This document shows, one piece after another, positions 5,595 to 28,994 of a DNA stretch of 64,000 nt. Both the position numbers and the translations under genes were made by a program. The notes beneath the pieces were generated by a model. The model was not told the origin of the DNA and ran no database searches. It saw only the letters and a list, made by a program, of their open reading frames with translations. The stretch covers positions 4,216,001 to 4,280,000 of the forward strand of contig OZ251224.1 in assembly GCA_965240325.2 (NCBI GenBank), read 5' to 3'. Within the stretch, counting starts at the first letter, position 1. Each line of letters starts with the position of its first letter. This DNA comes from Rebecca billardiae RCC1528 (Eukaryota; Protista; Haptophyta).

Positions 5595-8500
5595 TCACCA
5601 ACGGCGCGCGGCCGCGTCGCGGCCGGTGACAGCCTGGCGCCGCAGGGCGGCGAGCCGCTCGAGCGCAGCGTCGGCGTGCGCACGCAGCTCGAGCACGCCG
5701 CGCGTGCCCGGGGCGGGCACCCTCCACGCCGCGGGCGGCGTGCCGAGGTGCTGATCGGCCGGCTCGTCGCTCCATCGCATCCGCGCCTCGGGCGCCGCTT
5801 CGCGCGAGGCCGAGCGCGCGCGCTCCGCGCTCGCGCGCGGGCGCGGCGTGACGGGCGTGCTGAGCTGCTCCGGCTGTGGCGGAGGCGGCGAGTGCAGCCA
5901 CAGCGCACCCTCGAGCTCGGAGAGGGTGGGCGAGCGCGCGGCGGAGGAGGAGGAGGCGGAGGCGGAGGCGGAGGCGGAGCCGCTCGCTCGCTGCCCGCGC
6001 GCCGCCGGCCATTCCGAGCTAGCAGCCGCCGTGTGCAGCTGCGGCGGGCTCGGCGCGGACGGCCCGCGCCAGCGCGGCGGCCCGCGCTCGCTCGCGCCGC
6101 GCTCGACGGCGGCCGTACCCGCCCAGGCGCGTGGCGGCGCGTGCGACTGCGCCGAGGGCGCGGCCTCGGCGGCCTGGCAGCCGACCGAGTGTGCTGCCGC
6201 CGCCGCGCCGCACGCCGCCTGGCAAGCCGCGTCCACAGCGCGCGAGCCGGCGGGAGCGGCCGCGGCCGCGGCGCGGGCGGACGGCGGCGCAGCGCGCGGC
6301 GTGCACAGCGGCCGCGCAATCGCGGCCGCGCGCGCGGTGGCCGCGGCCGAGGCGCCGCCTCCGCCGCGCGGCGTCGGCGCGCCACGGCCCGAGCCGCCTT
6401 CCGCGCGCGCCGCCGCGGCGTGCGGCCGCGCGGCCGGCTCGGCCTCGGCAGCGGCGAGCAGGGCGGTGGCCCAGCGCCGACGGCCGGAGGCGGGCGCGCG
6501 CTCGGCGGGGGCAGCGCGGCACTCCGCGCCGCCGACGAGCGTGCTGGTCGGAAGCGCGTGCGGCGGGGCGCCGTCGGTGGCGCGCGCCGCGGCCGCCCAC
6601 GCCGCGACGCGCTCGCTGCCGCCCTCGGCGCCACCGTGGGCAGGGGCGCGCTGCGGCGCGGCGCGGGCGCTGGGCGCAGGCCGCGCCAACGCGTGCGCAG
6701 CCGCGCTCGCCGCCGCGGCCGCCGCCGCCCGCGCCGCGTGCGCCGCCGTGTCGGCGGTGCCGGCCCACGCGGCTGGGTGCGCGCTACCCGCCTCCGCCGC
6801 CACCCACGCGCTGCGCCGCGCACACGCGCCGGCGGCCGCGCCTGCAGGCAGCTGCTGCCACGGCGCGGTCGCAGCCCACGATTGCGCGCCGCCCGCCGCG
6901 GCGCCGCCACCGAGCGCGGGCGCGCCGCCCGCGGCCGCGCGCGCGTGCAGGGCGGGCGCGCGGCGCGGCGGCGCGGCGTGCGCTGGGCCCGCGGGCGCAG
7001 GGTGCGGCAGCGGCGACGATGGCGCCGGCGCGCGCGGCCGCATCGCCGGCGCGGCCGCGGCGGGCGCAGCGGGCGCGCTCGGCGGTGGCGCAAGCCGTGT
7101 GCCGGCGTGTGCGCACGCCGCCGGCGCGGCGCTCGCGCCGCCTCCGCGCCGCGTGCGCTCGTCGGCGAGCGGCGGGCGCCACGGCTCTGCGCGCGGCGCG
7201 GCCACGGCCGCCCGCGCCTCCGGCCTCGCCGCCGCACCCGCCGCGCTTCCGCCGCCCACCGCGCCCGCGTCCGCACCCGCGTCCGCGCCGGTACCGGCGG
7301 CGACGCGGGCGGGGGCGGAGGCGGAGGCGGAGGCGGAGGAGGCGGCGATGAGATGGGCTGCCAGCGCCGTCACCGCCTCCGCGGCGCGCGCCATCGGCGG
7401 GCGGCGGCGGCGCGCGGCGCGCGCGGCCGCGGCGCGACGCCACGCGCGCAACGCCGCGCGCATGCCGAGCGCCGCGCGCGCGCGTGGCGGCGCGCTCGGC
7501 TCGGCGCGCGCGCGCGCGCGCGCGCGCGCCCGCCGCGTCGGCGCGCGCGCGCGCGCCGCCGCCGCCTTGCGGCCGTGGCGGCGCGGGCGCGGCGTGGCGC
7601 GCGCTGGCGGCGGCGCCGCCTCGCGCGCGCGAGCGCGCGCGCGAGCGCGCGCGCGCGTACCGCTCGCGCGCCGAGCACACGCGCCGCCACCGCCTGAGCA
7701 GCTGCCGCGCGCGCGCGCGCGGCACCGCGGCCGCGGCCGCGGCGCGCGCGGCGCGCGCCGCGCTCGCGTGCGCGACGAGTGCGCGCACGCAGCGGCGCGC
7801 GACGCGCACCGCGGCGCGCGCGGCGCGGAGGCTCTCGAGCTGCGCCGTGCGCGCGACGCGCGCCGCCCAGCGGCGGAGGGCGCGGCGCGCGCTCCTCGCG
7901 CGCCGCCAGCGCGCGCGCGGCGCCGCGCGCGCCGCCAGCGCCCACGCGGCCGCCTCCGCCGTCGCGTCGGCCGCGGCGCGCGCGCGCCAGCCGCGCAGCG
8001 CGCGCGCGCGCGCCGCGCCGAGCGCGGCGGCACGGAGCGCGGCGGCGCGCGCGCGGCGCGAGGCGGCGCGGCGCCACCGCGCGAGCACGCCCTCCGCCAG
8101 CCGCGAGACCGCCGCGAGCCCGCGCCACGCGCCCACCGCCGCGGCCTCTGCGTGAACGCGCGCGGCGCGCCGCCACGCTGCGAGCGCGCGCCGCCGCCGG
8201 CCGCGCGCCGCGCGCGCCGCGCCGTCATGCGCCGCGGCCGCGGCGTCGGCCTCGGCGGCCCAGCGCGCGACGGCACGCGAGAGCGCGCGCCGTCGAGCGA
8301 GACGCGCCGCGCGCCGCTGCCGCGCGTCGCGCACCGCCGCCGCGCGCGTCGCGCCCAGCGCCGCCGCGAGGCCGCGCGCGCGCGAGGCCGCGCGCGCGCG
8401 CCGCGCCGCGCCCGATCGCGCGTCGCGCGCGCGCGCGGCCTCGCGCGCGCGCGCGGCGGCGGTGCTGCGCGGCGCGGCTCGCGTCGGCCGGGCTGGCCGC

Positions 8501-9495
8501 GCGCCCTGGCCCGCCGCCGCCGCCGCCGCCGCCGCGCCGAGCTCGCGCGCGCGCTGCGCCCAGCGCGCCGCCGCGCGCCGCACGGCCGCGCGCGCGGGCG
8601 CGGCCACGTGCCGCGCGAGCGCGCGCACGCTCGCACCGACGGCGGCGCGCGCGGCGTGCCGCCGCGCGCGCGCGAGCCGGCGGTGCGCGCGCACGCGCTC
8701 GCGCGCGCACGCGCGCACGAGCGCCAGCGCGCGCGCCAGCGCGCGCTCGGCCCGCGGCGCGGCCGCGCGCGCGCCGAGCGCCGCGGCGGCGCGGCGGCGC
8801 GCGAGCGCGCGCAGCGCGCGCACAGCGTGCAGCGCAAGCGTGCGCCCGCCGAGCGCGGCGGTGAGCGCGAGCTCGCGCTCGCGCGCGTGCACGTCCAACG
8901 CGCGCGCCGCGAGCGCCGCGAGCCCGCGCCGCGCGCCGCGCGCGCGCGCCGCCGCGCGCGCTCGCGTCACTGCGTGCCATGCGCGCAGCCGCGTGATGCG
9001 CGCGCGCGCGCACAGGGCGGCGCGCGCGCGGTGCACGGAGAGGGCGGCGGCGAGGCGGTCGGCGGCGCGCCGGGTCCAGCGGCGCAGCGCGAGCTGCGCC
9101 GCGCCGCGCCGCGCCGCGCCCAGCGCCTCCGCCGCGCTCACGGCCGTCGCGATTGCCCACGCGCGCAGCACGCGCGCAGCGATGCGCCGCGCGCCCAGGC
9201 TGCGCGCGAGCGAGTGCACGGAGGCGCGGAGCGAGCGGCGCCGGCCGATGTGGCGCCAGAGGCGCACCGCGCCGTCCAGACGCCGCCGCGCCGAGCGCGC
9301 GCCGAGCACGTGGCCCGCGGCCGCGCCCGGCGCGCGCTCGGGCGGACGGCTGGCGGCCGCGGCGCCGTGCGCGCGCCACGCGCGGAACGCGGCGCCCAGC
9401 TCGGCGCGCTTGCCCGTGGCGGGCGGCGGCGCGCGCCCGGCGAGCGCGAGCGCGTGGCGCAGCTGGTGCCCGAGCGCGTCGAGCTCCGCGCTCAT
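5595..9495 (-). CDS. Long Ala/Arg-rich protein with periodic Trp (Sfi1-like centrin-binding repeats) and low-complexity tail; junction near 7480-7660 unresolved
   Basis: From ATG 9495 (MSAELDALGHQL) there are recurring FRAW/LRAW/LRRW/LAAW/LARW/LRGW units. The reading continues in the frame of ORF 5595..8837 (ALGMRAALRAWRR...LELRAHADAALERLAALRR). A GT donor exists at 7660, but no clean in-frame splice was found across the (CG)n tracts. Confidence 0.5.
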
Positions 9496-9679
9496 CCGCT
9501 GCGCGAGGTCGGCCCAAGGCGCATGCCGGTGTCGCGAGTGACCAGCGCCGCGCGCTCGAACAGCCAGCCAGCCGAGTTGGCGAGCACAGCGCACCGGTCG
9601 CCGGGAGGTCGGGAGCTGTTGCGAGCGCACTTGTTCAGCGCAGGCAGTCGCTCGCCAAGGACTCACTCCTCGGCCCACG

Positions 9680-9916
9680 ATGGCGCCGCCCAGCAACGCG
9701 CGGACGCCAGCGGAGACGGCTGTGGGCTTGTGGCGCCTATGGCTGGCGTGGCGCGGTGTCGTCGCCGTGGGCGCGACGTCCCTCCTCGCGTATTGCCACT
9801 ACGAGATGTACCGCGCACAGCCCGAACTCTACCGATGGCCCTGGCCCAGGCGAGCAGCGCACGCCGCCGCCGCAGGCGCAGAGCGCACTGGGGAGAACGC
9901 GCGCGAGCAGCGGTGA
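9680..9916 (+). CDS. Small putative single-pass membrane protein (78 aa), divergent from the Sfi1-like gene
   Basis: ATG start, hydrophobic segment WRGVVAVGATSLLAYC followed by HYEMY; composition is more complex than the artefact ORFs. Confidence 0.45.
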   Translation: MAPPSNARTPAETAVGLWRLWLAWRGVVAVGATSLLAYCHYEMYRAQPELYRWPWPRRAAHAAAAGAERTGENAREQR

Positions 9917-12900
9917 CGGCGGACGGAGCGCAGGCACGCTCGGCGCGGCGGCTGTCGAACATGCACTACGTCTACGACGCAGTTACGCACTGCGCGTGCG
10001 CTGCTGCTGACGCGCATGGCCTCGCTCAACCCATGCGGCATCCGTCAGCGGATGGGAGTGATTACGGTCCCGCCCGCAGCGGGCGCGTAACTCAGACGAC
10101 CGTCTCAATAATGCCGCCCGCGTGTCAGATGCGTCCGGCAGCGGGTTATGACTACACTTGCACCAAGACCCAAGCCCACGCGCCGCGACAACAGGAAGCT
10201 ATAGCTGAGACTAATAACGACTGTACTGACGACGACGCGTAATTACACGGCTTAATCGGCTATTAATCGTCGGACTAGTAGATACTCGGTCCATTCTGTG
10301 AGTCTGCAGAAGAGTTAGGTGGTTCATCGTACTCTTATTAAATAATACTTTATGGCGCACGCCCCCCCCCCCGAAAGGTCTGAGCGTGAGCGAAAGCCGG
10401 GGGGGGGGGGGCGGCGCACGTGCTCCGCAAAATCAAAAAGAGGATGCGCGCAGGATTTTGGGGATCGATTTTTGTGGGTGGCCTTACCGTACGTATGAGT
10501 GGATTTCGCTGCCAATGATTGCGTTTGTAGTAGATGCTAATTTTAACGATAGTAACACTTAGGGGAATGCCGGGTGGAATAGCACATAGCACCAGCCGTG
10601 TTGTGTTCGAACATTCCGTCATAGTAAGATGCTTGAATTGTAAGAGCCTGAAACGTCTCGCCAACCATAGAAAAGAGAGGTTGAGTCAGATTTTATGTCG
10701 CTTGAAGTAAAGAATTATTATGCCGGCATCTGAAGTCATGATTCATGAACCGTCGCTTCTCAGTGGCGGATATCATCAGGTTAAGGCCGTTAACTCGTTA
10801 AGCCCCTTGTTAAAAGCCCCTTGATTACCCTTGATTCATACACGGGTAATATATCTTTTAAAGCCGGAAGGCGCTCAAAATACCCAAGTGGGCACTGGGT
10901 GCCGGGTGGCCCGCGAAGTAAAGTACAGTTTACTGCTATTATTAACGTGCACACTGCTTGGTTAACATTTTACTAAGCAGAATAAGAGACGCACACAGCT
11001 CAGGCAGGCGAGATTGCAGTATCATAATATCTCCCTTGATGATATGTACCCTGGTCGCGCGGGCAGGCACTAGGCAGTGGTGAGCAGGAAGGAGTTGGTT
11101 GGAGTGCTGAACCGAGGCAGCTCGGAGGGTGTCCACCGCCCACGCAGGCCGCTGCCGCACGATCGTTCAATCCGACAGACTCAGCGCAGGTGCGCGCAGC
11201 TGCGGCGGGTCCCAACGGCCGTCGGCATCGCATTCGTGCCTCGCTCACCCCGCGCGCCCCGCCCTGCCGACCCGCGTCCACGCGCGTGCGCGCCTGACGT
11301 CGCGCAGCCTTTTCGGTGCAAGCTCCGTTCTGCTGGTGTTCGAGACTGTGGCTGGCGCAGGCGCACGAGGAGAGGGCAGCGCGAGTGTCTGCGTGCTCGC
11401 TGCATCTTGCTGCGCGATGGTCCGCTCGTCTGCTCCCACGATCTCGAGTGACTCGACCGATCTCGTCTGGGACAGCGGCGAGCGCACGATCAGCTTGCAG
11501 CTGCCAACACAGCGCGCTCGGCGTGAGCAGCCCGCGGGAGCGGTGGCAGTGACCGAGCTGCGCCGCACCGCCGGCCGCACGCGCGTGCGCCAGTTGGGTG
11601 GCGTCGTGGTCTCGCCTTTCAGCCGTTTCATCCGCCGCTCAGGCCGATTTTACGCCGTCAGCAGCCATTTGTCGACGCGCTACGCGTCAGACGGCTGACG
11701 AGCCGGGTGAGCCGCCTGTGGGCCGTCAAGCCGCATCACCCAGCGCAGCTTCGCCCGCGACGACGGCTTCGCCTGGCTACCACTGCTCATCAGCCGCGTG
11801 CTCGGCGGGCTCGGCGGGCGTCGTTCGGCCGAGCACGGCTGCAGCGCAGCACGCGTAAGTAAGAGGCCGTGGAGCCTGGAGCGCCCCGACTGTGACGCGG
11901 ATGGCGGAGGCGCCGGGCTTTGCGGGAATTGGGCTCGGGCTGCCATGAGCCGCCACGGGCTCGGGGCTGTACCGTCTGCGCAGATCGCGCTCGGCCCGGC
12001 CGCAGCCCTCCTGAGCGCGCGCCTCAGAGCTGAGACTGATCACGGGCCGAGGCGCACGAGCGACACTGCCATGCGGCTCGGTGTCGAGCCGCGCCCGCTG
12101 CGTGTGAGGCTCGAGGCGCGGCGCTCGCACGGGCTCAACGCGGGCGCAGCGGGTGCGCGCAGCTGGCGCACGCAGCCACGCGCGGAACTAGCTAGGGCCG
12201 TGCGCCCTCAACTTCGTTGTTTACTACCCGAAGATCGGCGTAGCCGATCATATATATCGGGCGGCGGAAGTACTACTTTATTATTACTTTATTATTATAA
12301 CTTATTAGCAGCGAATAATCCCGCGGGCCCCCGGGGTAAACGCAGCACAAGGCCTGCGGCCGGCCGTCAACTCGTCAAGGCCGCGCACTCGGCACTCTCT
12401 GTCACTCTGACTCCGAGTCCGAGGCTGCCCGGTCTGAGAGTGACTCAGAGTCGGCGCACTCAGCACTGGCGCCAGGCGGCAGCTTCCAGGCCCAGCCATC
12501 ATCAGTCTAGTCGCAATCTGCCAGCACTCGGGTAAGCTAGTCCGTAAGTCCCGCGAAGTCGCCGAAGTCCGATCGGCCCAGCGTACGAGCAGGACTCGCC
12601 AGACAGAGGCGCCCAGACTCCGTCAGAGTGGCCCAGTCAGTGAGGCCAGACGCCCGCGCCTGCGGATCTAACTCTAAGGGCAAGGCAGCCGATGCAGTCA
12701 CCGTGACCCACGGTGCCGCGGCGGTCCGTGCGCCGAAACATGTTGGTCGGTGCACGGCGCACGCGACGCGCCACCCGCGTGCGAGCCGCGGCGCCGCCGG
12801 CGACGCAGGACGAGCTTGGCTGGAGCCATCTCGCACGCCCGCGCCTGGCGAAGCAGGCGGCGGCCAGGGGCAGGGGGCGCCGGAAACCGGTCTCCTGGGC

Positions 12901-22705: not shown

Positions 22706-25700
22706 ATGGCCCAGCAAGCCCTCGGGACGGTGCACGACACTCTGCGCGTGCTGATCGGTGCGCACCCGCTCAGCCTTCGCGGCCCCGTCGCCGAGGCCAC
22801 GCGTCTCCCTCGCCGCGCGTGCACATCCTTGGTCCAGCTCACCCGCGCCCCGACCCCCCCCGCGCGCGCGCGCGCAGAGGGGACGGTGCATCCGCTGGTG
22901 GTCGCCGATGGCTCGCGCGTCGTGCTCGCGGTGAACCCGCCCGCGCGCGATCTGCTGGTCGGGAGCGAGGGGGGCGAGCCCGTCGGCCGCAAGATCGCAC
23001 ACCTGCTGCGGCCCGACCCGAACGCCGGCGACGTCGCCGCCGAGGGCGAGCACGTGTGCACGATTGTCTCGTGTGAGCAGCGCACCAACTGCGTCACCAA
23101 GCGCGTGGGCGGGTACATCTGCCTCAACCTGATGCCCACCGGGCTGCTGCTGGGCGAGGACGACGAGAACGCCGCCGAGCACGCCGACGACGCCGCCGAG
23201 CGCGAGCAGCACGAGCACGAGCTCGAGGTGGCCGAGGAGGAGGAGCGCGCGTTCACCGAGCGAATCGCCGGCCACGTGCTGCCCGCGCCGACCGAGGACG
23301 TGGAGGGCTCGCCCGACGGCGAGCTGCACCTGCACGTGCTCTTCGTGGACGACGACCCGTTCCAGGCCAACGTGATGACCATGCTCTGCGCGTCCAACGG
23401 CTACCAGCTCACGCACTGCGCGAACGGCCCCGACGCGATCGAGGAGCTCAAGCTGCCCGAGCACCCGTACAACCTCGTGATGCTCGACCTCAACATGCAG
23501 CCAATGCACGGGCTCGAGGTGCTCAAGGCGATCCGCAAGTTCAACAAGCACATCACCGTGATCATCATCACCGCCACCGAGGACGACCACATGGTCAAGG
23601 TACGAGCCGCCGCGCCGCGCGCGCGCGAGAGAGAGAGAGAGAGGGAGGGAGAGAGAGAGAGGGAGAGAGAGAGAGGGAGACACAGAGACAGAGACACAGG
23701 GGGCGTGTGCCTCGCGCCGCGCGGCGCGGCGCGAGGCGACCGGTCGGTGCCGGCTGGCGGCGGCCGACGCGCGTCGCGCGCGTTGCGCGCACTCGCGCGC
23801 GTGCGCAGGCGTGCATCCTCCACGGCGCGAACTCGTACCTCGTCAAGCCCGTGCGCGAGAAGGACGTGCGCAACATCGGCCACTTTGCCATCGAGGCGAC
23901 CAAGGCGGAGAAGCGCAGGCGGCGCGCGCGCGTGCGCTCCGCGATCGCGTCCGTGCTGATGACCAAGTTTGCGATCGTGTTCATGCCGCTGCGCGCGTTC
24001 AAGGCGGAGGGGCGGCTGATCCCGCACGAGGTGGCGCGCGCGAAGGGGCTGCTCACGCAGTGCGACACGTACGACGAGGTCGCAGAGTTCATCCGAGTCC
24101 ACCCGACTGTGCGCGCGCGCGCGCTTGCGCCGGCGCCGCGGCGGCGCGCCGCCCCTCTCGCCGCCGAGCGCGTGGCTGTCGCCCGCGCGCGGCCGGTCGT
24201 TGGCGTGCGCAGCGGGCGGGCGAGCGCGCGCTCACTCGCATCACTCGCGCGCGCCCCGCGTGCGCCGTGCAACGTGCCCGCCGCCGCGTGCCGACCGTGT
24301 GCGCACAACGCCACGCAACGCCACGCCACGCAACGCCACGCCACGCACCGCAACGGCATGCATCAGGCCTTTTTCTCGCACCAGGCGCGGCCGCGAACCG
24401 CACGCGTGCCGAGCGCCCCTGCTGCCGAGCGCGCGCCGACCCCAGGCGGCGCGCTCGGCGCTCGGCGGTGCGCCGCTTGCGCCCTGCGCTGAGCGGCCGC
24501 GCGCCCCGCCCCTTCGCCCTCTGCGCGCGCGCCCGCGCCTGCAGTGGCTGGGCCGCAGCCACCCGGACCCGGAGGGGCGGCAGTACGAGCTGATGCTCGA
24601 CGCCTCGCGCCGGCTGTGTGAGCTCGAGGGCGTGTCGGAGGAGTCGCTCTTCGTCTGGGTGCGCGGCACGCGCCGAGCACGCGCGCGCGCTCGCAGCCCG
24701 GGGCGCGGCCGTCGGGTGGGGGGCCGTCCGGTGGGGGGCCGGAGCCTGCGGGCGCGCCGTGTGCGCCGTCCGCGCATCGGCCGCGCCGTCCGCGCCGCGG
24801 CCGCGCGCCGCCGGTCGCGCGGCGCGCCGGCCCGTGCGTCGGCGGGCGCAGGGCGCGCGCTGAGCCCGCCTCCGCCCCGCCGGCCCGCCCCCCTCTGCCG
24901 CCCGTTTGGCCTGCCCCGACCCCACCCCCACCCTCCACCCCGTCGCCTGCTGCCCCCGCGCGCATGGATGGCGTGCGCCTTGAATGTGCGCGCACGCACA
25001 GATCGACTACATCTCGATCCCGCAGCGCAACAAGCACATGCAGCGCATGAGCATCTCGACGCTGGGTGTGTACGCGTCGCTGTGCAAGTACTTCGTGGTG
25101 GTCGCGCCCGAGGCGACGCACGCGGACACGCGCCGCCGGTGCGACGCGACGACGTACCGCAAGCGAGGCTGGTGCCGCCTCGAGCAGTGGGCGCACCTCA
25201 CCGCCGCGGGCACGGAGAACATGTTTGCCATCGAGCGCGCGGGCGAGCTGGGCATGATCGACCAGCAGGACGCGTGGGTGGACGACTCGATCCGCGTGTT
25301 TGGCGGCGACTTCACGTTCGAGGTGCGCGGCGCAGCGCGGCGCAGCGCGGCGCAGCGCGGGGGGCGCCGTCGTGCTCGCGGCCCTGTCGTGTGCTGCCGT
25401 CGGACTGGCGGCGCGCGCCGCGCACGCGCGCGTGCTTGCCGCCGGCTGAGCGCGGCCTCGCGCCCCGCGCGCGGCCCCTCCTCCGTTGCGCGCGCTCCCC
25501 CAGGAGGACAAGCGGCAGCTGGTGGACGTGGTGATGGGCCTGTGGTCGCTCACGCTCGTGGCGCACGCGGCCGGGCTGTCGCACGTGCTGCCCATCATCA
25601 AGCGCGTGGATGCGCGCAAGGCGGAGGTGCGCGCGCGCGCGCTGCAGAGGGGGCGCGGCGGAGGGGGCAGCGCGCGCCGCGGCGGGGGCTGCTGCGGCGG

Positions 25701-26780
25701 CTGTGCGCGGCGGCGGGGCGGTCTCGCTGCCGCGCGGGCCGAGGCAGGCCGCGGCTGCGCACGCGCCGACCCCCGCTTCCCCCGCCCTCCCTCCGTCATC
25801 CCGCGCCGCGCCGCGCCCCCGCCGCTTGGTGCGTGCCCCGTGCCGCAGGTCTTCCCGTCCGAGCAGTTTGGGGAGATGGTCACGATGCTGGAGGACGAGA
25901 TCCGGCTGTACTACGAGGCGGAGCCCGCGCCGATCAGGGCCGACGCAAACGTGAGTGAGGCGCGCGCTCGCGCCGCAGGGGGCGGGGGCCTCGCGCTGCC
26001 GAGGGCTGCCGAGCGCGCGGCGCCGAGCGCGAGCGGGCGCGCGCGCTGGAGCGCCGTGCCGCGCGCCCCGCGCCCGCGCTGCGCCCGGCTCGACTGGCGC
26101 TCACGCGCGCGCCCGCCTCCCCCCCCCCCTCCCCCCCCGCGCGCAGGCGGAGTGGTCGCAGTCGATGCTCAGCCTGCCGCACCAGGCCTCGCACCTGACC
26201 GTGCAGTCCGTCTCCTCGCCTGGGCGGCGCAACCGCTTCGGCCCGCCCTCCATCACCACGACCGCGCGAGCATCCGAGATGCACGTCGTCGCGGCCGAGC
26301 TCGTGGAGAACCGCCGGCTGTACCACAAGCTGGCGGCGAGCGGGGTGGGCGCGGACGGCGCGAAGCAGACGGCGATGGCGCAGCTGCAGGTCTCGATGGA
26401 GGCGCTCAAGCTGCCCGCGGACGCGGAGCTCGTGCGCGAGGTGCTCGTCTCGATGCGGATCGAGCCCGCCGGCCCGCCGCTCGCCTTCCGCGACTACTGC
26501 CGCGCGCTCGGCAAGCTGAGGCGAGTGCGGAGCGGCGTGGGCGCCAACTCGCCGTCGCCGATGATGCGGATCGCGCCCTCGCTCTCGAGGTCACCGCGCA
26601 TGGCGCAGGAGGACGGGGTGGGCCTCCAGCACGGCGGCGGCGGCGGCAGCTCGTCGCTCAGCTTGCCGCCGCCGGCTTGGCAAGTGGGCTCGAGCAGCAA
26701 GCTGCGCGAAAGGGGCTCGGGCCTGAGCCCGATGCAGCTGCCACAGCCTGCTGCCACACCGGTGCCAGGAGGAGTCACCG

Positions 26781-26785
<5 letters not shown>
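22706..26785 (+). CDS. PAS-like + response-regulator receiver + HET-like domain + degenerate EF-hand-like protein; exons 22706-22757, 22878-23599, 23809-24108, 24367-24384, 24545-24658, 25002-25322, 25504-25626, 25849-25950, 26147-26785
   Basis: PAS-like LVVADGSRVVLAVNPPARDLLVG..VGRKIAHLL. Canonical REC: VLFVDDD, LVMLDLNMQPMHGLE, IIITA, GANSYLVKP. HET-like: FFSHQW..HPDP, WIDYISIPQ, Y..RGWCRLE. All eight splice junctions keep the frame. Confidence 0.85.

Positions 26786-26852
<67 letters not shown>
26786..26852. repeat. (TA)n microsatellite
   Basis: About 33 TA units directly after the stop codon at 26783-26785. Confidence 0.98.
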
Positions 26853-26854
<2 letters not shown>

Positions 26855-26891
26855 CTAATCAATATTATATATATATTATCATCGTCATTAT

Positions 26892-27000
26892 TATATATTT
26901 AACGACGTGGCAGCATCGGACAAGCGTCAGGCTCAGAGTGCAACAGACACATAGAATGCGTCCGCGCCTTCCGTCCAGGTCAGACAGTGCGCCACCCGCA
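26892..27000 (-). mobile_element. ~110-bp truncated copy of the end of the element at 46858-46967
   Basis: Reverse complement of 46858-46967 with one substitution and one 1-nt indel; both copies end in TA-rich tails. Confidence 0.75.
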
Positions 27001-27372
27001 TATATAATATTATATAGTAATAATATAGACAGAGTACAATAAAAGTTCTGGTGAGCAGCTCTAGCGTAGATGAGTGAGATACAGCTACTAGCTAGCGCTA
27101 ACTAGCGGCGAAGATCCAGCACGAAGCCAGCTGTCGTCGTCAGAACGGTGAACCGCGCCGGTACGGCCGAGCAGCTCGGCCTCGTGGCGCGGTCTGCGCC
27201 TGCGCCGGGTCGTTGCCGGCGGTGCCCAGCGCGCGCGGTGTCACTGCCATGGCCGTGCGCGCGCGCGGTCCCGGTGCCAGCCGACATGATCGTGATTGCC
27301 TGCGATAGCCCGGCCACCGCCGCGCAGCAGCTATGCGCGCGCAGCATGCGCCAGCCAGCTCCGCCCCTAGCC

Positions 27373-28994
27373 CTACGAGGTGTTCACCGAGATGAAGCCG
27401 TACTGGGTCTGCGCCTGCGTGTTGGGCGGCACGTAGTGTGTGACCGCCGCCTTCTGCTCCGCCTCTGGCAGGTCCTGCGCCATCGCGTGGTGCATCGCCG
27501 ACGCGACGAGCGGCGACCTCGCCATCGCGGGCGTGGCCATCCGCGACACGTCCAGCCCGTCGTAGCTGAAGCACGGCAGCTGGATGTTCGCGTTGTACAC
27601 GGCGGTGCCGACCAGCAGGATCGCGAGGCCGGCGAGCTCGAGGAAGGACCAGTTGGTCCACATCTCGCCAAACGCGCCGCCCGACACGGCATAGAAGATG
27701 AAGAGGTCGGTCGACCAGACGGTGATCGGCCTGAAGTTGTCGAGGATCGCGTGCCACACGCTGTTGAGCAGGTACGTGACGAGCACGCCGAACGTGTTGT
27801 ACAGGAAGATGAAGAGGAAGTACCACACGAGGATCAGCTGGATCGTGCTCGAGTTTTGGATCATCACCAGCGTGTTGCGCGGGTCCTCTATCCGGCCGTG
27901 GTCGTCGCCCGGCAGGAAGAACGCCAGCGGGTACAGCACGAGCGTGCAGATCACCGCGCCCCACAGGCCCTGCGCGCGCGCAGCCGGCCGAGCGGAGCGG
28001 TGCGCGGGCGCACGGGCGAGAGAGAGAGGGGGCGAGAGAAAGCGGTTGCGGCGGTGGTGGCAGGGGCGCCGTCAGCGCCGGCGCGCGCGCGCGCGCGCCG
28101 GGCAGGGCGCGCGGGGATCGGGCGCGGCCGCGCGCGGGGGTCGCGCGCGCGCGCTCGCACCTCCATGCCAATCACCAGCAGCGGCGGCGCGGAGACGTCG
28201 CCCGTCATCACCTTCTCCTCGAACGCGTACTGCAGCGACTGCACAAACGTGCCGCACAGGATCAGCGCAACGCCCAGCAGGGGGTTGTCTGCGCGGCCGC
28301 GCGGAGGCGGCGGGGGAGGATGGGCGGGGCGGGCGGGCGGGCGCGGCGGCGGCTCGGCGTGATGGGTGGGTTGGCGCGCGCGAGCCCTCGACCACCGGCG
28401 CCGCGCGTGCGTGCGCCGCGTGCGCGCACCGCCGCTCATGTCGTCCGAGCCCGCGCCCAGCACGCTCGTCAGCCCGACCAGCGTGATCGCGAGCGCGAGC
28501 AGGCAGACGCCGACCCAGTTGTAGCCCTTCAGCCGGTCCTTGAGCAGGTAGTGCTTCATCAACGCGACGAAGACGATGCACGCGCCGCGTAGCAGCTGGT
28601 ACACCGACGCAGAGATGTGCAGCAGCCCAAACATGCACAGCACGGTCGCGAGGAGGTCAAAGCACGCCGGCACGGCGAGGATAAAGTAGGTCCAGGTCGG
28701 CATGCTCGGCTTGGGCACCTCGATGGCGGGGTTAATCCCCTTCTTCAGCGACTGCTGCTCCTCGCTGCCTTTGCGCCTCTCCCAGTACTCGTACGCGAAG
28801 TGGATCGGCAGCGCGCATGTCATCGCGACAAACATGATCCACGACTGGAAGAGCGGGTCCTCGAACTTCTCGACCTCACCGGTCATGCCGACGGACTCGG
28901 CCGTCAGCAGCATCTTCGACGCGAGCGAGCATCCCGTGCCCGAGATCAGCCCGATCACGAACACGAGGACCTCGCGCCACGTGCACGCGGCCAT
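27373..28994 (-). CDS. SLC35F6-like / DMT-superfamily nucleotide-sugar-type transporter; introns 28289-28429 and 27970-28160
   Basis: Motifs FEDPLFQSWIMFVAM, PACFDLLAT, ASVYQLLRGACIVF, QSLQYAFEEK, IGMEGLWG, WHAILDNFRPITVW; about 10 hydrophobic segments. Confidence 0.9.

What the first reader, a model, noticed from the sequence alone, without database searches (positions are those of the whole stretch)
22706..26785. Eukaryotic PAS-receiver-HET-like-EF-hand-like fusion: a candidate phosphorelay-gated HET effector
Seen: nine exons splice in frame to give a PAS-like segment, then an intact receiver domain (DD, phospho-acceptor D in MLDLNM, T, KP). These are followed by a domain with FFSHQW-x5-PDP / WIDYxSIPQ / RGWCRLE motifs and a degenerate EF-hand-like pair (MAQLQVSMEALKL..ELVREVL..LAFRDYCRAL). 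Known: SHxW, WIDxxxIxQ and RGWxxxE are hallmarks of HET (PF06985)-type domains, which are TIR-related cell-death effectors in fungal allorecognition. Inference: a His-Asp phosphorelay or small-ligand signal may switch on a HET-type, possibly NAD-consuming, output in an alga. I do not recognise this architecture as described. No single ORF in the track reveals it.
Basis: partly seen in the sequence, partly recalled or inferred. Interest (0 to 1): 0.85.

Follow-up and report, generated by a model that had tools for sequence, protein, structure and literature searches.

The report
Algal response regulator with HET/TIR-like output
A GC-rich haptophyte alga has a real nine-exon gene that joins a two-component "receiver" phosphorylation switch to a domain related to fungal HET and TIR immune or cell-death modules. 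I found no paper on this wiring; it could link His-Asp signalling to that domain, whose activity is still untested.

Summary
The exon chain is real. Nine exons (22706-26785, +) splice in frame to 796 aa. A polyadenylated mRNA contig of an orthologue, plus genomic copies in further taxa, confirm the junctions from exon 2 through exon 8. This includes the 18-nt AFFSHQ microexon with its GC donor.

- **Receiver:** genuine (Pfam 8e-18), with all catalytic residues present.
- **PAS:** probable only.
- **"EF-hand pair":** not supported.

The domain belongs to a family of over 1,100 clusters, mainly in haptophytes. Most members sit behind a membrane helix and ligand-binding ectodomains. Only this orthologue group carries a receiver. 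REC, linker and HET-like parts are under strong purifying selection (dN/dS 0.02-0.08).

Best reading: a response regulator whose output is a HET/TIR-type module. Any enzymatic or death function is inferred.

The scan has already noted this output domain on other DNA of the same genome (H-NOX, GPCR and lectin fusions), but not with a receiver. This is a new variant of a known kind.

The parts
22706..26785 (+). Whole coding region, ATG to TGA: nine exons, 796 aa
   Evidence: In-frame splice chain; orthologue mRNA and protein colinear with it
22706..22757 (+). Exon 1 (52 nt; MAQQALGTVHDTLRVLI + first base of the next codon)
   Evidence: The same 52-nt exon and a conserved peptide are recovered in orthologue mRNA L001 only after removing its retained 98-nt intron
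22739..23143 (+). PAS-like segment (aa 12-106; spans intron 1)
   Evidence: Pfam PAS_4 E 0.079 and PAS E 0.15; PAS_4 E 0.0015 in orthologue P0206; language-model and Atlas-model neighbours are all PAS clan. All below curated cut-offs
23333..23874 (+). Receiver (REC) domain, aa 170-280, split by intron 2 (23600-23808)
   Evidence: Pfam Response_reg E 8e-18 and 5.6e-24; dN/dS 0.07 against the orthologue
23486..23488 (+). Codon of the predicted phospho-acceptor Asp221 (in MLDLNM)
   Evidence: Position within the REC match; acidic pocket D175-D177, T249 and K271 also present
23875..23967 (+). Basic linker between REC and the HET-like domain (aa 281-311)
   Evidence: Identical in the orthologue, dN/dS 0.02, the most constrained part of the gene
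23968..25920 (+). HET/TIR-like domain, aa 312-574, over exons 3 to 8
   Evidence: Family alignment A1; AlphaFold2 pLDDT 96 on the orthologue's domain; HET the only recurrent Pfam family; structure matches; dN/dS 0.08
24367..24384 (+). 18-nt microexon encoding AFFSHQ, followed by a GC-AG intron
   Evidence: Peptide contiguous in orthologue mRNA; GC-donor intron at the same SHQ|W position in L002; P0206-P0208 all break right after SHQ
25182..25184 (+). Codon of invariant Glu463 (RGWCRLE), candidate catalytic residue
   Evidence: Invariant in 42 and in 52 family members. It lies at the start of the helix after the third strand of the model. Equivalence to the TIR catalytic Glu is inferred, not superposed
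26264..26536 (+).
   Evidence: 67% identical to the orthologue, dN/dS 0.30. No Pfam family, no homologues, low-confidence four-helix model
26786..26852 (.). (TA)n microsatellite directly after the stop codon
   Evidence: Read from the sequence

Best explanation
This is one soluble 796-aa protein of a GC-rich haptophyte. It has a short PAS-like domain, an intact two-component receiver, a highly conserved basic linker, a 260-aa HET/TIR-superfamily domain and a poorly conserved helical tail. It is best read as a response regulator whose output is the HET/TIR-like domain.

Shown:
- The fusion exists in mRNA.
- It is conserved in at least four other taxa and is under strong purifying selection.
- The receiver has every residue needed for phosphorylation.
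- The output domain folds with high confidence and has a cluster of invariant polar residues (S-H-Q-W, D, D, Q, Y, R-G-W-C-R-L-E).

Inferred:
- A hybrid histidine kinase/HPt relay phosphorylates Asp221.
- As in other response regulators, this changes self-association through the linker.
- That switches on the HET/TIR-like domain, which, like enzymatic TIR domains, needs oligomerisation and uses the W-x3-E glutamate to cleave NAD+ or a related nucleotide into a signal.
- The PAS-like domain may add a second, ligand or redox, input.

In most relatives the same domain sits under ligand-binding receptor ectodomains. I therefore rate signal production as more likely than outright cell killing.
For: - Gene model and fusion.
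- Receiver.
- Selection: dN/dS is REC 0.07, linker 0.02, HET-like 0.08, against 0.76 for the tail end, at dS about 0.7.
- Output domain family: 1,107 cluster representatives at E<=1e-3; invariant residues.
- HET link: 15 of 42 members hit PF06985, best E 1.3e-5, and no other family recurs. An Atlas fungal PF06985 cluster matches at TM 0.55.
- Output role: 39 of 49 long relatives have a membrane helix within 90 aa upstream of the domain. Their ectodomains are Peripla_BP_6, ANF_receptor, dCache, SBP_bac_1, FG-GAP and others.
- The PAS-REC cassette occurs with a different C-terminal output (coiled coil plus ankyrin) in P0210. This fits REC as input and the C-terminus as output.
- HET is remotely related to TIR, and HET homologues occur in Haptophyceae: PMC4986451.
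Against: - No enzymatic or death activity of any HET domain is established (PMC10197012).
- This protein's own domain gives no Pfam HET or TIR hit.
- Profile and single-sequence searches of solved structures find nothing.
- The Glu463 = TIR catalytic Glu equivalence rests on motif and secondary-structure position, not on a residue-level superposition.
- No RNA run of this organism was listed, so expression in this genome is not shown.
- No cognate kinase or HPt was identified here. Their presence in the genome rests on earlier unchecked scan notes.
Confidence: 0.55

Rival explanations
1. The HET/TIR-like domain is a non-enzymatic adaptor. Like the TIR domains of Toll-like receptors and MyD88, it signals only by homotypic contacts. 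This soluble PAS-REC protein would then be a phosphorylation-controlled adaptor that docks onto the HET-like tails of the many membrane receptors of the same family.
Against: Ten invariant polar or charged residues, including H, D, D, Q, Y, R, R and E, are more than a docking surface usually keeps. The W-x3-E glutamate is retained in every member.
Confidence: 0.2
2. The domain is an enzyme of another class with the same three-layer alpha/beta fold, such as a nucleotide-sugar or nucleoside transferase or hydrolase (fucosyltransferase-like or nucleoside 2'-deoxyribosyltransferase-like). It would then be neither a TIR-type NADase nor a HET-type death domain.
For: The top structural matches by Z are NodZ 6.9, FUT1 6.3 and FUT8 6.2-6.4. 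They cover model residues 1-190, including the N-terminal extension. Nucleoside 2'-deoxyribosyltransferases score 5.8-6.3.
Confidence: 0.1
3. The receiver is not used as a phospho-switch. It acts as a constitutive dimerisation or scaffold module, and the PAS-like domain, or nothing, is the real input.
For: Eukaryotic and bacterial pseudo-receivers exist (PMC12632262, listed). No partner kinase or HPt was identified here.
Against: All five catalytic positions are intact and conserved in four orthologues. REC dN/dS is 0.07. Earlier, unchecked scan notes report many hybrid histidine kinases with HPt in the same genome.
Confidence: 0.1
4. The fusion is an artefact of gene modelling: two neighbouring genes (PAS-REC and HET-like) joined by chance in-frame splicing.
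For: The joint depends on an 18-nt microexon with a non-canonical GC donor. No RNA run of this organism was listed.
Against: A polyadenylated orthologue mRNA contig carries REC, linker, HET-like domain and tail in one ORF. In three other taxa REC, linker and AFFSHQ lie in one uninterrupted genomic ORF. The linker is the most conserved segment.
Confidence: 0.02

Closest known systems
Fungal HET domain proteins (Pfam PF06985; e.g. Podospora HET-E, Neurospora TOL and HET-6)
   Same: Three motif blocks in the same order (xSHxW, WIDxxxIxQ, RGWxxxE). HET is the only Pfam family that recurs in the relatives. Predicted fungal HET proteins are among the nearest shapes. HET homologues in Haptophyceae were already mentioned in PMC4986451.
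   Different: Most members, including this one, fall below the Pfam cut-off. The domain has an added N-terminal beta/alpha extension and a C-terminal helical subdomain. Partners are a receiver or membrane receptor ectodomains, not NACHT/WD or stand-alone proteins. No link to allorecognition or cell death is shown in algae.
Enzymatic TIR domains (SARM1, plant TNL TIRs such as RPS4 and RUN1, bacterial AbTir, ThsB, SPARTA TIR-APAZ)
Gephyrocapsa huxleyi 'TIR domain-containing' genes that respond to virus infection (New Phytol 2025, PMC12489294)
   Same: That paper describes haptophyte proteins with a leucine-binding/EGF-like ectodomain, one membrane helix and an intracellular TIR-like domain with a conserved Glu, modelled on RPS4 and SARM1. 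This is the architecture I find for most relatives of this domain.
   Different: I could not test whether their genes belong to this exact family. The paper reports no additional signalling domains and does not mention response regulators (0 occurrences).
Response regulators with enzymatic outputs (bacterial REC-GGDEF such as PleD and WspR; CheB)
   Same: N-terminal receiver, a conserved linker and a C-terminal catalytic or oligomerising output. This is the logic proposed here.
   Different: Those are bacterial and their outputs are cyclases or methylesterases. A HET/TIR-type output was not found in any paper searched. No prokaryotic relative of the output domain was found in 185,579 genomes by pattern scan.

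Membership tests
Response regulator receiver (PF00072) | Profile match above the curated cut-off (30.2 bits) | tested here: met
   65.1 bits, E 8e-18 on exon 2 alone; 84.9 bits over profile positions 1-107 of 111 in the orthologue
Response regulator receiver (PF00072) | Catalytic quintet: acidic pair, phospho-acceptor Asp, Thr/Ser, Lys | tested here: met
   D175/D176/D177, D221, T249 and K271; conserved in P0151 and P0206-P0208
Response regulator receiver (PF00072) | Actual phosphorylation by a His-Asp relay | not testable with these tools
   Needs biochemistry. Hybrid kinases in the same genome are known only from unchecked scan notes
HET domain (PF06985) | Profile match above the curated cut-off (22.5 bits) | tested here: not met
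   No hit at E<=1 for the orthologue's domain or for the window's exons. 15 of 42 relatives hit, best E 1.3e-5, and the ones inspected scored 13.6-19.4 bits
HET domain (PF06985) | Three conserved blocks in order (SxxW-type strand, WIDxxxIxQ, RGWxxxE) | tested here: met
   FFSHQW, WIDYISIPQ and RGWCRLE, invariant across the family. The weak HET matches span HET profile positions 4-111 of 146. The HET motif wording is recalled from memory and from PMC4986451
HET domain (PF06985) | Same fold as fungal HET proteins | tested here: inconclusive
   An Atlas cluster that is 94% PF06985 matches at TM 0.55 by query, 185 residues, rmsd 4.0. Both sides are predictions, and no solved HET structure was found
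HET domain (PF06985) | Induces cell death when expressed or activated | not testable with these tools
   Needs an expression assay
TIR domain (enzymatic type) | Match to a TIR profile (PF01582, PF13676, PF08937, PF10137 and others) | tested here: not met
   No TIR family among the hits of 42 members at E<=1. No solved TIR found by sequence
TIR domain (enzymatic type) | TIR fold | tested here: inconclusive
TIR domain (enzymatic type) | Catalytic Glu in the helix after strand C | tested here: inconclusive
   Invariant E463 lies at the start of helix 150-163 of the model, after strand 124-128. No residue-level superposition was available
PAS domain | Profile match above the curated cut-off | tested here: not met
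   PAS_4 13.6 bits (cut-off 23.1) here and 19.2 bits in P0206. Supporting leads only
EF-hand pair | EF-hand profile match or helix-loop-helix pair with Ca-binding loop | tested here: not met
   No Pfam hit at E<=1. The model has pLDDT 61, and its first two helices are joined by a 3-residue turn. No EF-hand among the Foldseek matches. Language-model neighbours score only 0.88-0.89

The most novel reading that the evidence does not exclude
The HET/TIR-like domain is the general second-messenger-producing output module of haptophyte (and some dinoflagellate) signal transduction, comparable in role to GGDEF or cyclase domains. It would be plugged under periplasmic-binding-protein, Cache, H-NOX, GPCR and lectin sensors, and here under a His-Asp phosphorelay. 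This gene would then be the first eukaryotic response regulator that converts a phosphorelay signal into a TIR-type nucleotide signal. It would also be a soluble, switchable handle for finding out what HET domains actually do.
Probability: 0.25. Interest if true: 0.85.

Novelty: new variant of a known kind. Interest (0 to 1): 0.55.

Why it matters
HET is one of the most abundant fungal cell-death and immunity domains, yet its biochemical activity is still unknown (PMC10197012). TIR domains are central to immunity in animals, plants and bacteria. Haptophytes, which form globally important blooms, have expanded a HET/TIR-like domain into hundreds of receptor-like proteins. Their function is unstudied apart from one transcriptomic report on virus-responsive 'TIR' genes.

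A soluble version controlled by a standard receiver has a well-understood on/off switch (D-to-E, D-to-A, BeF3-). That makes it a practical way to ask whether the domain is an enzyme, what it makes, and whether it signals or kills. It would also show a new output class for eukaryotic two-component signalling.

Tried and rejected
- **RNA evidence in this organism:** The look-up of sequencing runs listed no run.
- **Handling of the spliced protein:** it has no single reference, so I did not type it into any tool. Exons were searched apart, and the orthologue P0151 (93.5% identical in the HET-like domain) stood in for folding and profile work.
- **Sequence searches of solved structures:** the family profile and the core domain gave only noise (CdiI, peptide deformylase, polyhedrin).
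- **Prokaryotic and viral relatives:** none confirmed in the genome or viral collections.
- **EF-hand reading of the tail:** rejected for lack of any support. One relative, P0160, does carry a true EF-hand after its HET-like domain, but it shows no similarity to this tail.
- **HPt reading of the tail:** a four-helix model and one weak HPt row at E 2.3. Rejected as meaningless at pLDDT 61.
- **Eight-exon model without intron 1:** suggested by P0151's start. Rejected because the orthologue mRNA has a frame-breaking retained intron there.
- **'Solute carrier 35' name on relative P0198:** this could have hinted at sugar-nucleotide biology. The protein is simply a fragment of this domain. The downstream ORF at 27373-27954 (-) has no Pfam hit.
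- **Identifying the genome:** exact look-up of a window ORF found nothing on record.
Full report
**The sequence and the gene model**

The window is 69% G+C and the region has eukaryotic gene structure. Joining the nine segments 22706-22757, 22878-23599, 23809-24108, 24367-24384, 24545-24658, 25002-25322, 25504-25626, 25849-25950 and 26147-26785 gives 2,391 nt, in frame, 796 codons and a TGA. The introns are 120-343 nt and 76-87% G+C, against 69% for the exons. Seven are GT-AG. The one after the 18-nt microexon is GC-AG.

**Independent support for the splice chain**

A search of 1.8 billion cluster representatives with exon 6 found P0001 (94% identical, 744 aa). Its 90% cluster holds P0151, an 830-aa MMETSP transcript ORF. 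P0001 is encoded without interruption on L001, a 2,699-nt contig that ends in a poly(A) run. L001 is therefore an mRNA.

The orthologue aligns colinearly with the model and reads straight across the junctions of exons 2 to 8, including HPT|AFFSHQ|WL and FVW|IDY. The exon 8/9 junction falls in a divergent, gapped stretch of that alignment and is not checked in this way.

Three further proteins (P0206-P0208, from other contigs) carry PAS-like, REC, linker and AFFSHQ in one genomic ORF and break right after SHQ. In L002 that break is a 238-nt intron with a GC donor, followed by WLSREHPDP. The odd microexon boundary is thus conserved across taxa.

P0151's own start (MRSG...) at first suggested that intron 1 does not exist. 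However, L001 carries the exon-1 peptide (MALALGAPVHDTLRVLV) in another frame, followed by a 98-nt GT..AG segment. Removing that segment gives the same 52-nt exon 1 in frame. So intron 1 is real, and P0151's start is an intron-retention artefact.

No RNA run of this organism itself was listed.

**Selection**

These values compare the window with the orthologue mRNA, at dS about 0.7.

| Segment | dN/dS |
|---|---|
| PAS-like part | 0.14 |
| REC | 0.07 |
| REC-to-HET linker | 0.02 |
| HET-like domain | 0.08 |
| Conserved tail | 0.30 |
| Tail end | 0.76 |

The fusion, and especially the joint between its two main domains, is maintained by selection.

**The N-terminal half**

- **Receiver.** Pfam Response_reg scores E 8e-18 on exon 2 alone and 5.6e-24 over profile positions 1-107 of 111 in the orthologue. 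D175-D177, D221 (in MLDLNM), T249 and K271 are present and conserved in all orthologues. This is an intact receiver.
- **PAS.** The PAS call is weaker. PAS_4 scores E 0.079 and PAS 0.15 here, and PAS_4 0.0015 in P0206, all below cut-off. The ten best named language-model neighbours are all PAS clan. The Atlas's own model of residues 55-150 matches PAS proteins at TM 0.5-0.58. I call it probable.
- **A shared cassette.** A paralogous PAS-REC cassette (42% identical) occurs in P0210 with a coiled-coil and ankyrin C-terminus and no HET-like domain. This fits the cassette being an input module that has been combined with different outputs.

**The C-terminal domain**

The domain spans aa 312-574, from FAIVFMPL to EIRLYY. 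It belongs to a family with 1,107 cluster representatives at E<=1e-3 and 502 at E<=1e-10. Where taxa are recorded they are mostly Haptophyta (Prymnesium and others), plus a dinoflagellate.

An alignment of 42 members (A1) shows these invariant residues: F, S, H, Q, W (FxSHQW), D (PDP), D and Q (WxDYxSIPQ), Y, R, W, R, E (YxxRGWCRLE) and a VFP..F block. The core D, Q, Y, R, W, R and E stay invariant in 52 full-length members.

Pfam gives nothing for this protein's own domain. HET (PF06985) is nevertheless the only family that recurs among the members: 15 of 42 at E<=1, best 1.3e-5. The matches inspected cover HET profile positions 4-111 at 13.6-19.4 bits, against a cut-off of 22.5.

AlphaFold2 on A1, with the orthologue's domain as first row, gives pLDDT 96 and pTM 0.92. 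The model has these parts:

- a small N-terminal beta/alpha extension;
- a parallel-sheet core, with strands at 50-55, 92-95, 124-128 and 168-171 and intervening helices;
- a C-terminal helical subdomain (203-266).

**What the fold resembles**

- **Foldseek against the PDB.** No match at E<=0.001. The weak list is enriched in TIR domains (RPS4/RRS1, RUN1, SPARTA, TIR-STING, TIR-1), the ThsA SLOG domain and nucleoside deoxyribosyltransferases.
- **VIA-align.** All of these scores are within one unit and below 8, a range the tool warns may reflect only a common arrangement.

|---|---|
| NodZ | 6.9 |
| FUT8 | 6.2-6.4 |
| FUT1 | 6.3 |
| Nucleoside 2'-deoxyribosyltransferases | 5.8-6.3 |
| AbTir | 6.2 |
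| SPARTA TIR | 6.2 |
| SARM1 TIR | 5.8-6.0 |
| MyD88 | 5.3-5.5 |
| ThsB | 5.1-5.3 |

- **Identity in those alignments.** It is highest for TIRs (17-20% for SARM1, AbTir and TIR-1), against 7-13% for the rest.
- **ESM Atlas.** The nearest shapes are haptophyte clusters that carry Ank, LRR_6, MORN, HNOB or TPR, plus an Ascomycota cluster that is 94% PF06985 (TM 0.55).

Taken together, the domain belongs to the HET/TIR superfamily at the level of motifs, weak profiles and predicted fold. It is not a member of Pfam HET or of any TIR family by their own thresholds.

Glu463 lies four residues after the invariant Trp, at the start of the helix that follows the third core strand. From memory, this is where the TIR catalytic Glu lies in SARM1 (WVHKE) and plant TIRs (SxWCLxEL). 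I could not make a residue-level superposition, so this equivalence is inferred.

**What the family does with the domain**

Of 49 long relatives, 39 have a strongly hydrophobic 19-mer within 90 residues upstream of the domain. Pfam partners among 52 long members are Peripla_BP_6 (6), ANF_receptor (3), dCache_1 (3), FG-GAP_3 (3), SBP_bac_1 (2), Phosphonate-bd (2), Ig-like, Ephrin_rec_like, Laminin_G, beta-helix, one kinase and one ankyrin protein. The receiver appears only in the orthologue of this gene.

The domain is thus the usual cytoplasmic tail of single-pass, ligand-binding receptor-like proteins. The receiver-fused form is a rare, soluble variant.

**The tail**

The block aa 624-714 is conserved with the orthologue (67%). 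It has no Pfam family at E<=1 and no homologue in the word-indexed database. Its AlphaFold2 model is poor (pLDDT 61): four helices, the first two joined by a three-residue turn. It has only generic helical-bundle matches. Language-model neighbours include EF-hand clusters only at 0.88-0.89, below the tool's level for a lead. The EF-hand reading is unsupported. It is not excluded for the second helix-loop-helix.

**Literature**

- Dyrka et al. 2014 (PMC4986451) showed the remote HET-TIR similarity and listed HET homologues in Haptophyceae, including Emiliania huxleyi.
- A 2023 review states that the HET domain's activity is still unknown (PMC10197012).
- A 2025 paper on Gephyrocapsa huxleyi describes virus-responsive genes with an ectodomain, a membrane helix and an intracellular TIR-like domain with a conserved Glu. 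It reports no other signalling domains and never mentions response regulators (PMC12489294).
- Searches for receiver-TIR or receiver-HET fusions found nothing relevant.

**Earlier scan notes**

In the same genome the scan has already noted this output domain fused to H-NOX, GPCR-type, PA-7TM and lectin modules. It has also noted many hybrid histidine kinases, some with HPt. No note combines a receiver with this domain. I checked the first kind only indirectly, through the HNOB and other fusions in the Atlas search. I did not check the second kind at all.

**Verdict**

This is a PAS-like/receiver/HET-TIR-like protein, a response regulator with a new kind of output, conserved in several haptophytes. 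That phosphorylation gates the domain, and that the domain is a nucleotide-cleaving enzyme, are reasonable inferences and not findings. The family context favours signalling over killing.

It is a new architectural variant within a family that is partly described and that this scan has met repeatedly. Its value is as a tractable entry point to the biochemistry of HET-type domains.

Noticed in passing
window 26786-27070: A (TA)n microsatellite of about 67 nt starts at the base after the stop codon. It is followed by an AT-rich island in a genome that is otherwise 69% G+C. It may be the 3' UTR or terminator region.
   Followed up: no
window 23618-23690; 24296-24345; 25327-25360: The introns carry short tandem repeats: (GA)n/GGGA in intron 2, a CGCAACGCCACGCCA-type repeat in intron 3, and GGCGCAGCGCG x3 at the start of intron 6. 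Introns are 76-87% G+C, higher than the exons.
   Followed up: no
window 24385-24544; L002 1591-1828: A GC-AG intron sits directly after an 18-nt microexon. The same intron position and GC donor are conserved in another taxon. Prokaryote-style gene callers end the ORF here, which is why database entries P0206-P0208 look like plain 'CheY-like' proteins.
   Followed up: yes
L001 68-165: The orthologue's polyadenylated mRNA contig retains a frame-breaking 98-nt intron 1. The MMETSP ORF labelled 'complete' (P0151) therefore has an artefactual N-terminus.
   Followed up: yes
P0210 (MMETSP transcript, 1200 aa): A paralogous PAS-REC cassette (42% identical) is fused to a long coiled coil, a second PAS-like stretch and ankyrin repeats instead of the HET-like domain.
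   Followed up: partly
P0160 (475 aa): A family member with a membrane helix, the HET-like domain and a genuine C-terminal EF-hand (Pfam EF-hand_5 E 2e-6 at 437-457). A Ca-binding tail does occur in this family, though not detectably in this gene.
   Followed up: partly
P0198 (Durusdinium trenchii, 183 aa): A dinoflagellate fragment of this domain is named 'Solute carrier family 35 member B1' in NCBI. The sequence is FISHQWLSRSHPDP... followed by WYDYLCIPQ, so the name is probably wrong, and the family extends to Symbiodiniaceae.
   Followed up: partly
window 6001-10000: Two 2-kb bins reach 84-88% G+C, far above the window mean.
   Followed up: no
window 27373-27954 (-): A downstream ORF of 193 aa looks like a multi-pass membrane protein fragment. 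It has no Pfam match at E<=0.1.
   Followed up: partly
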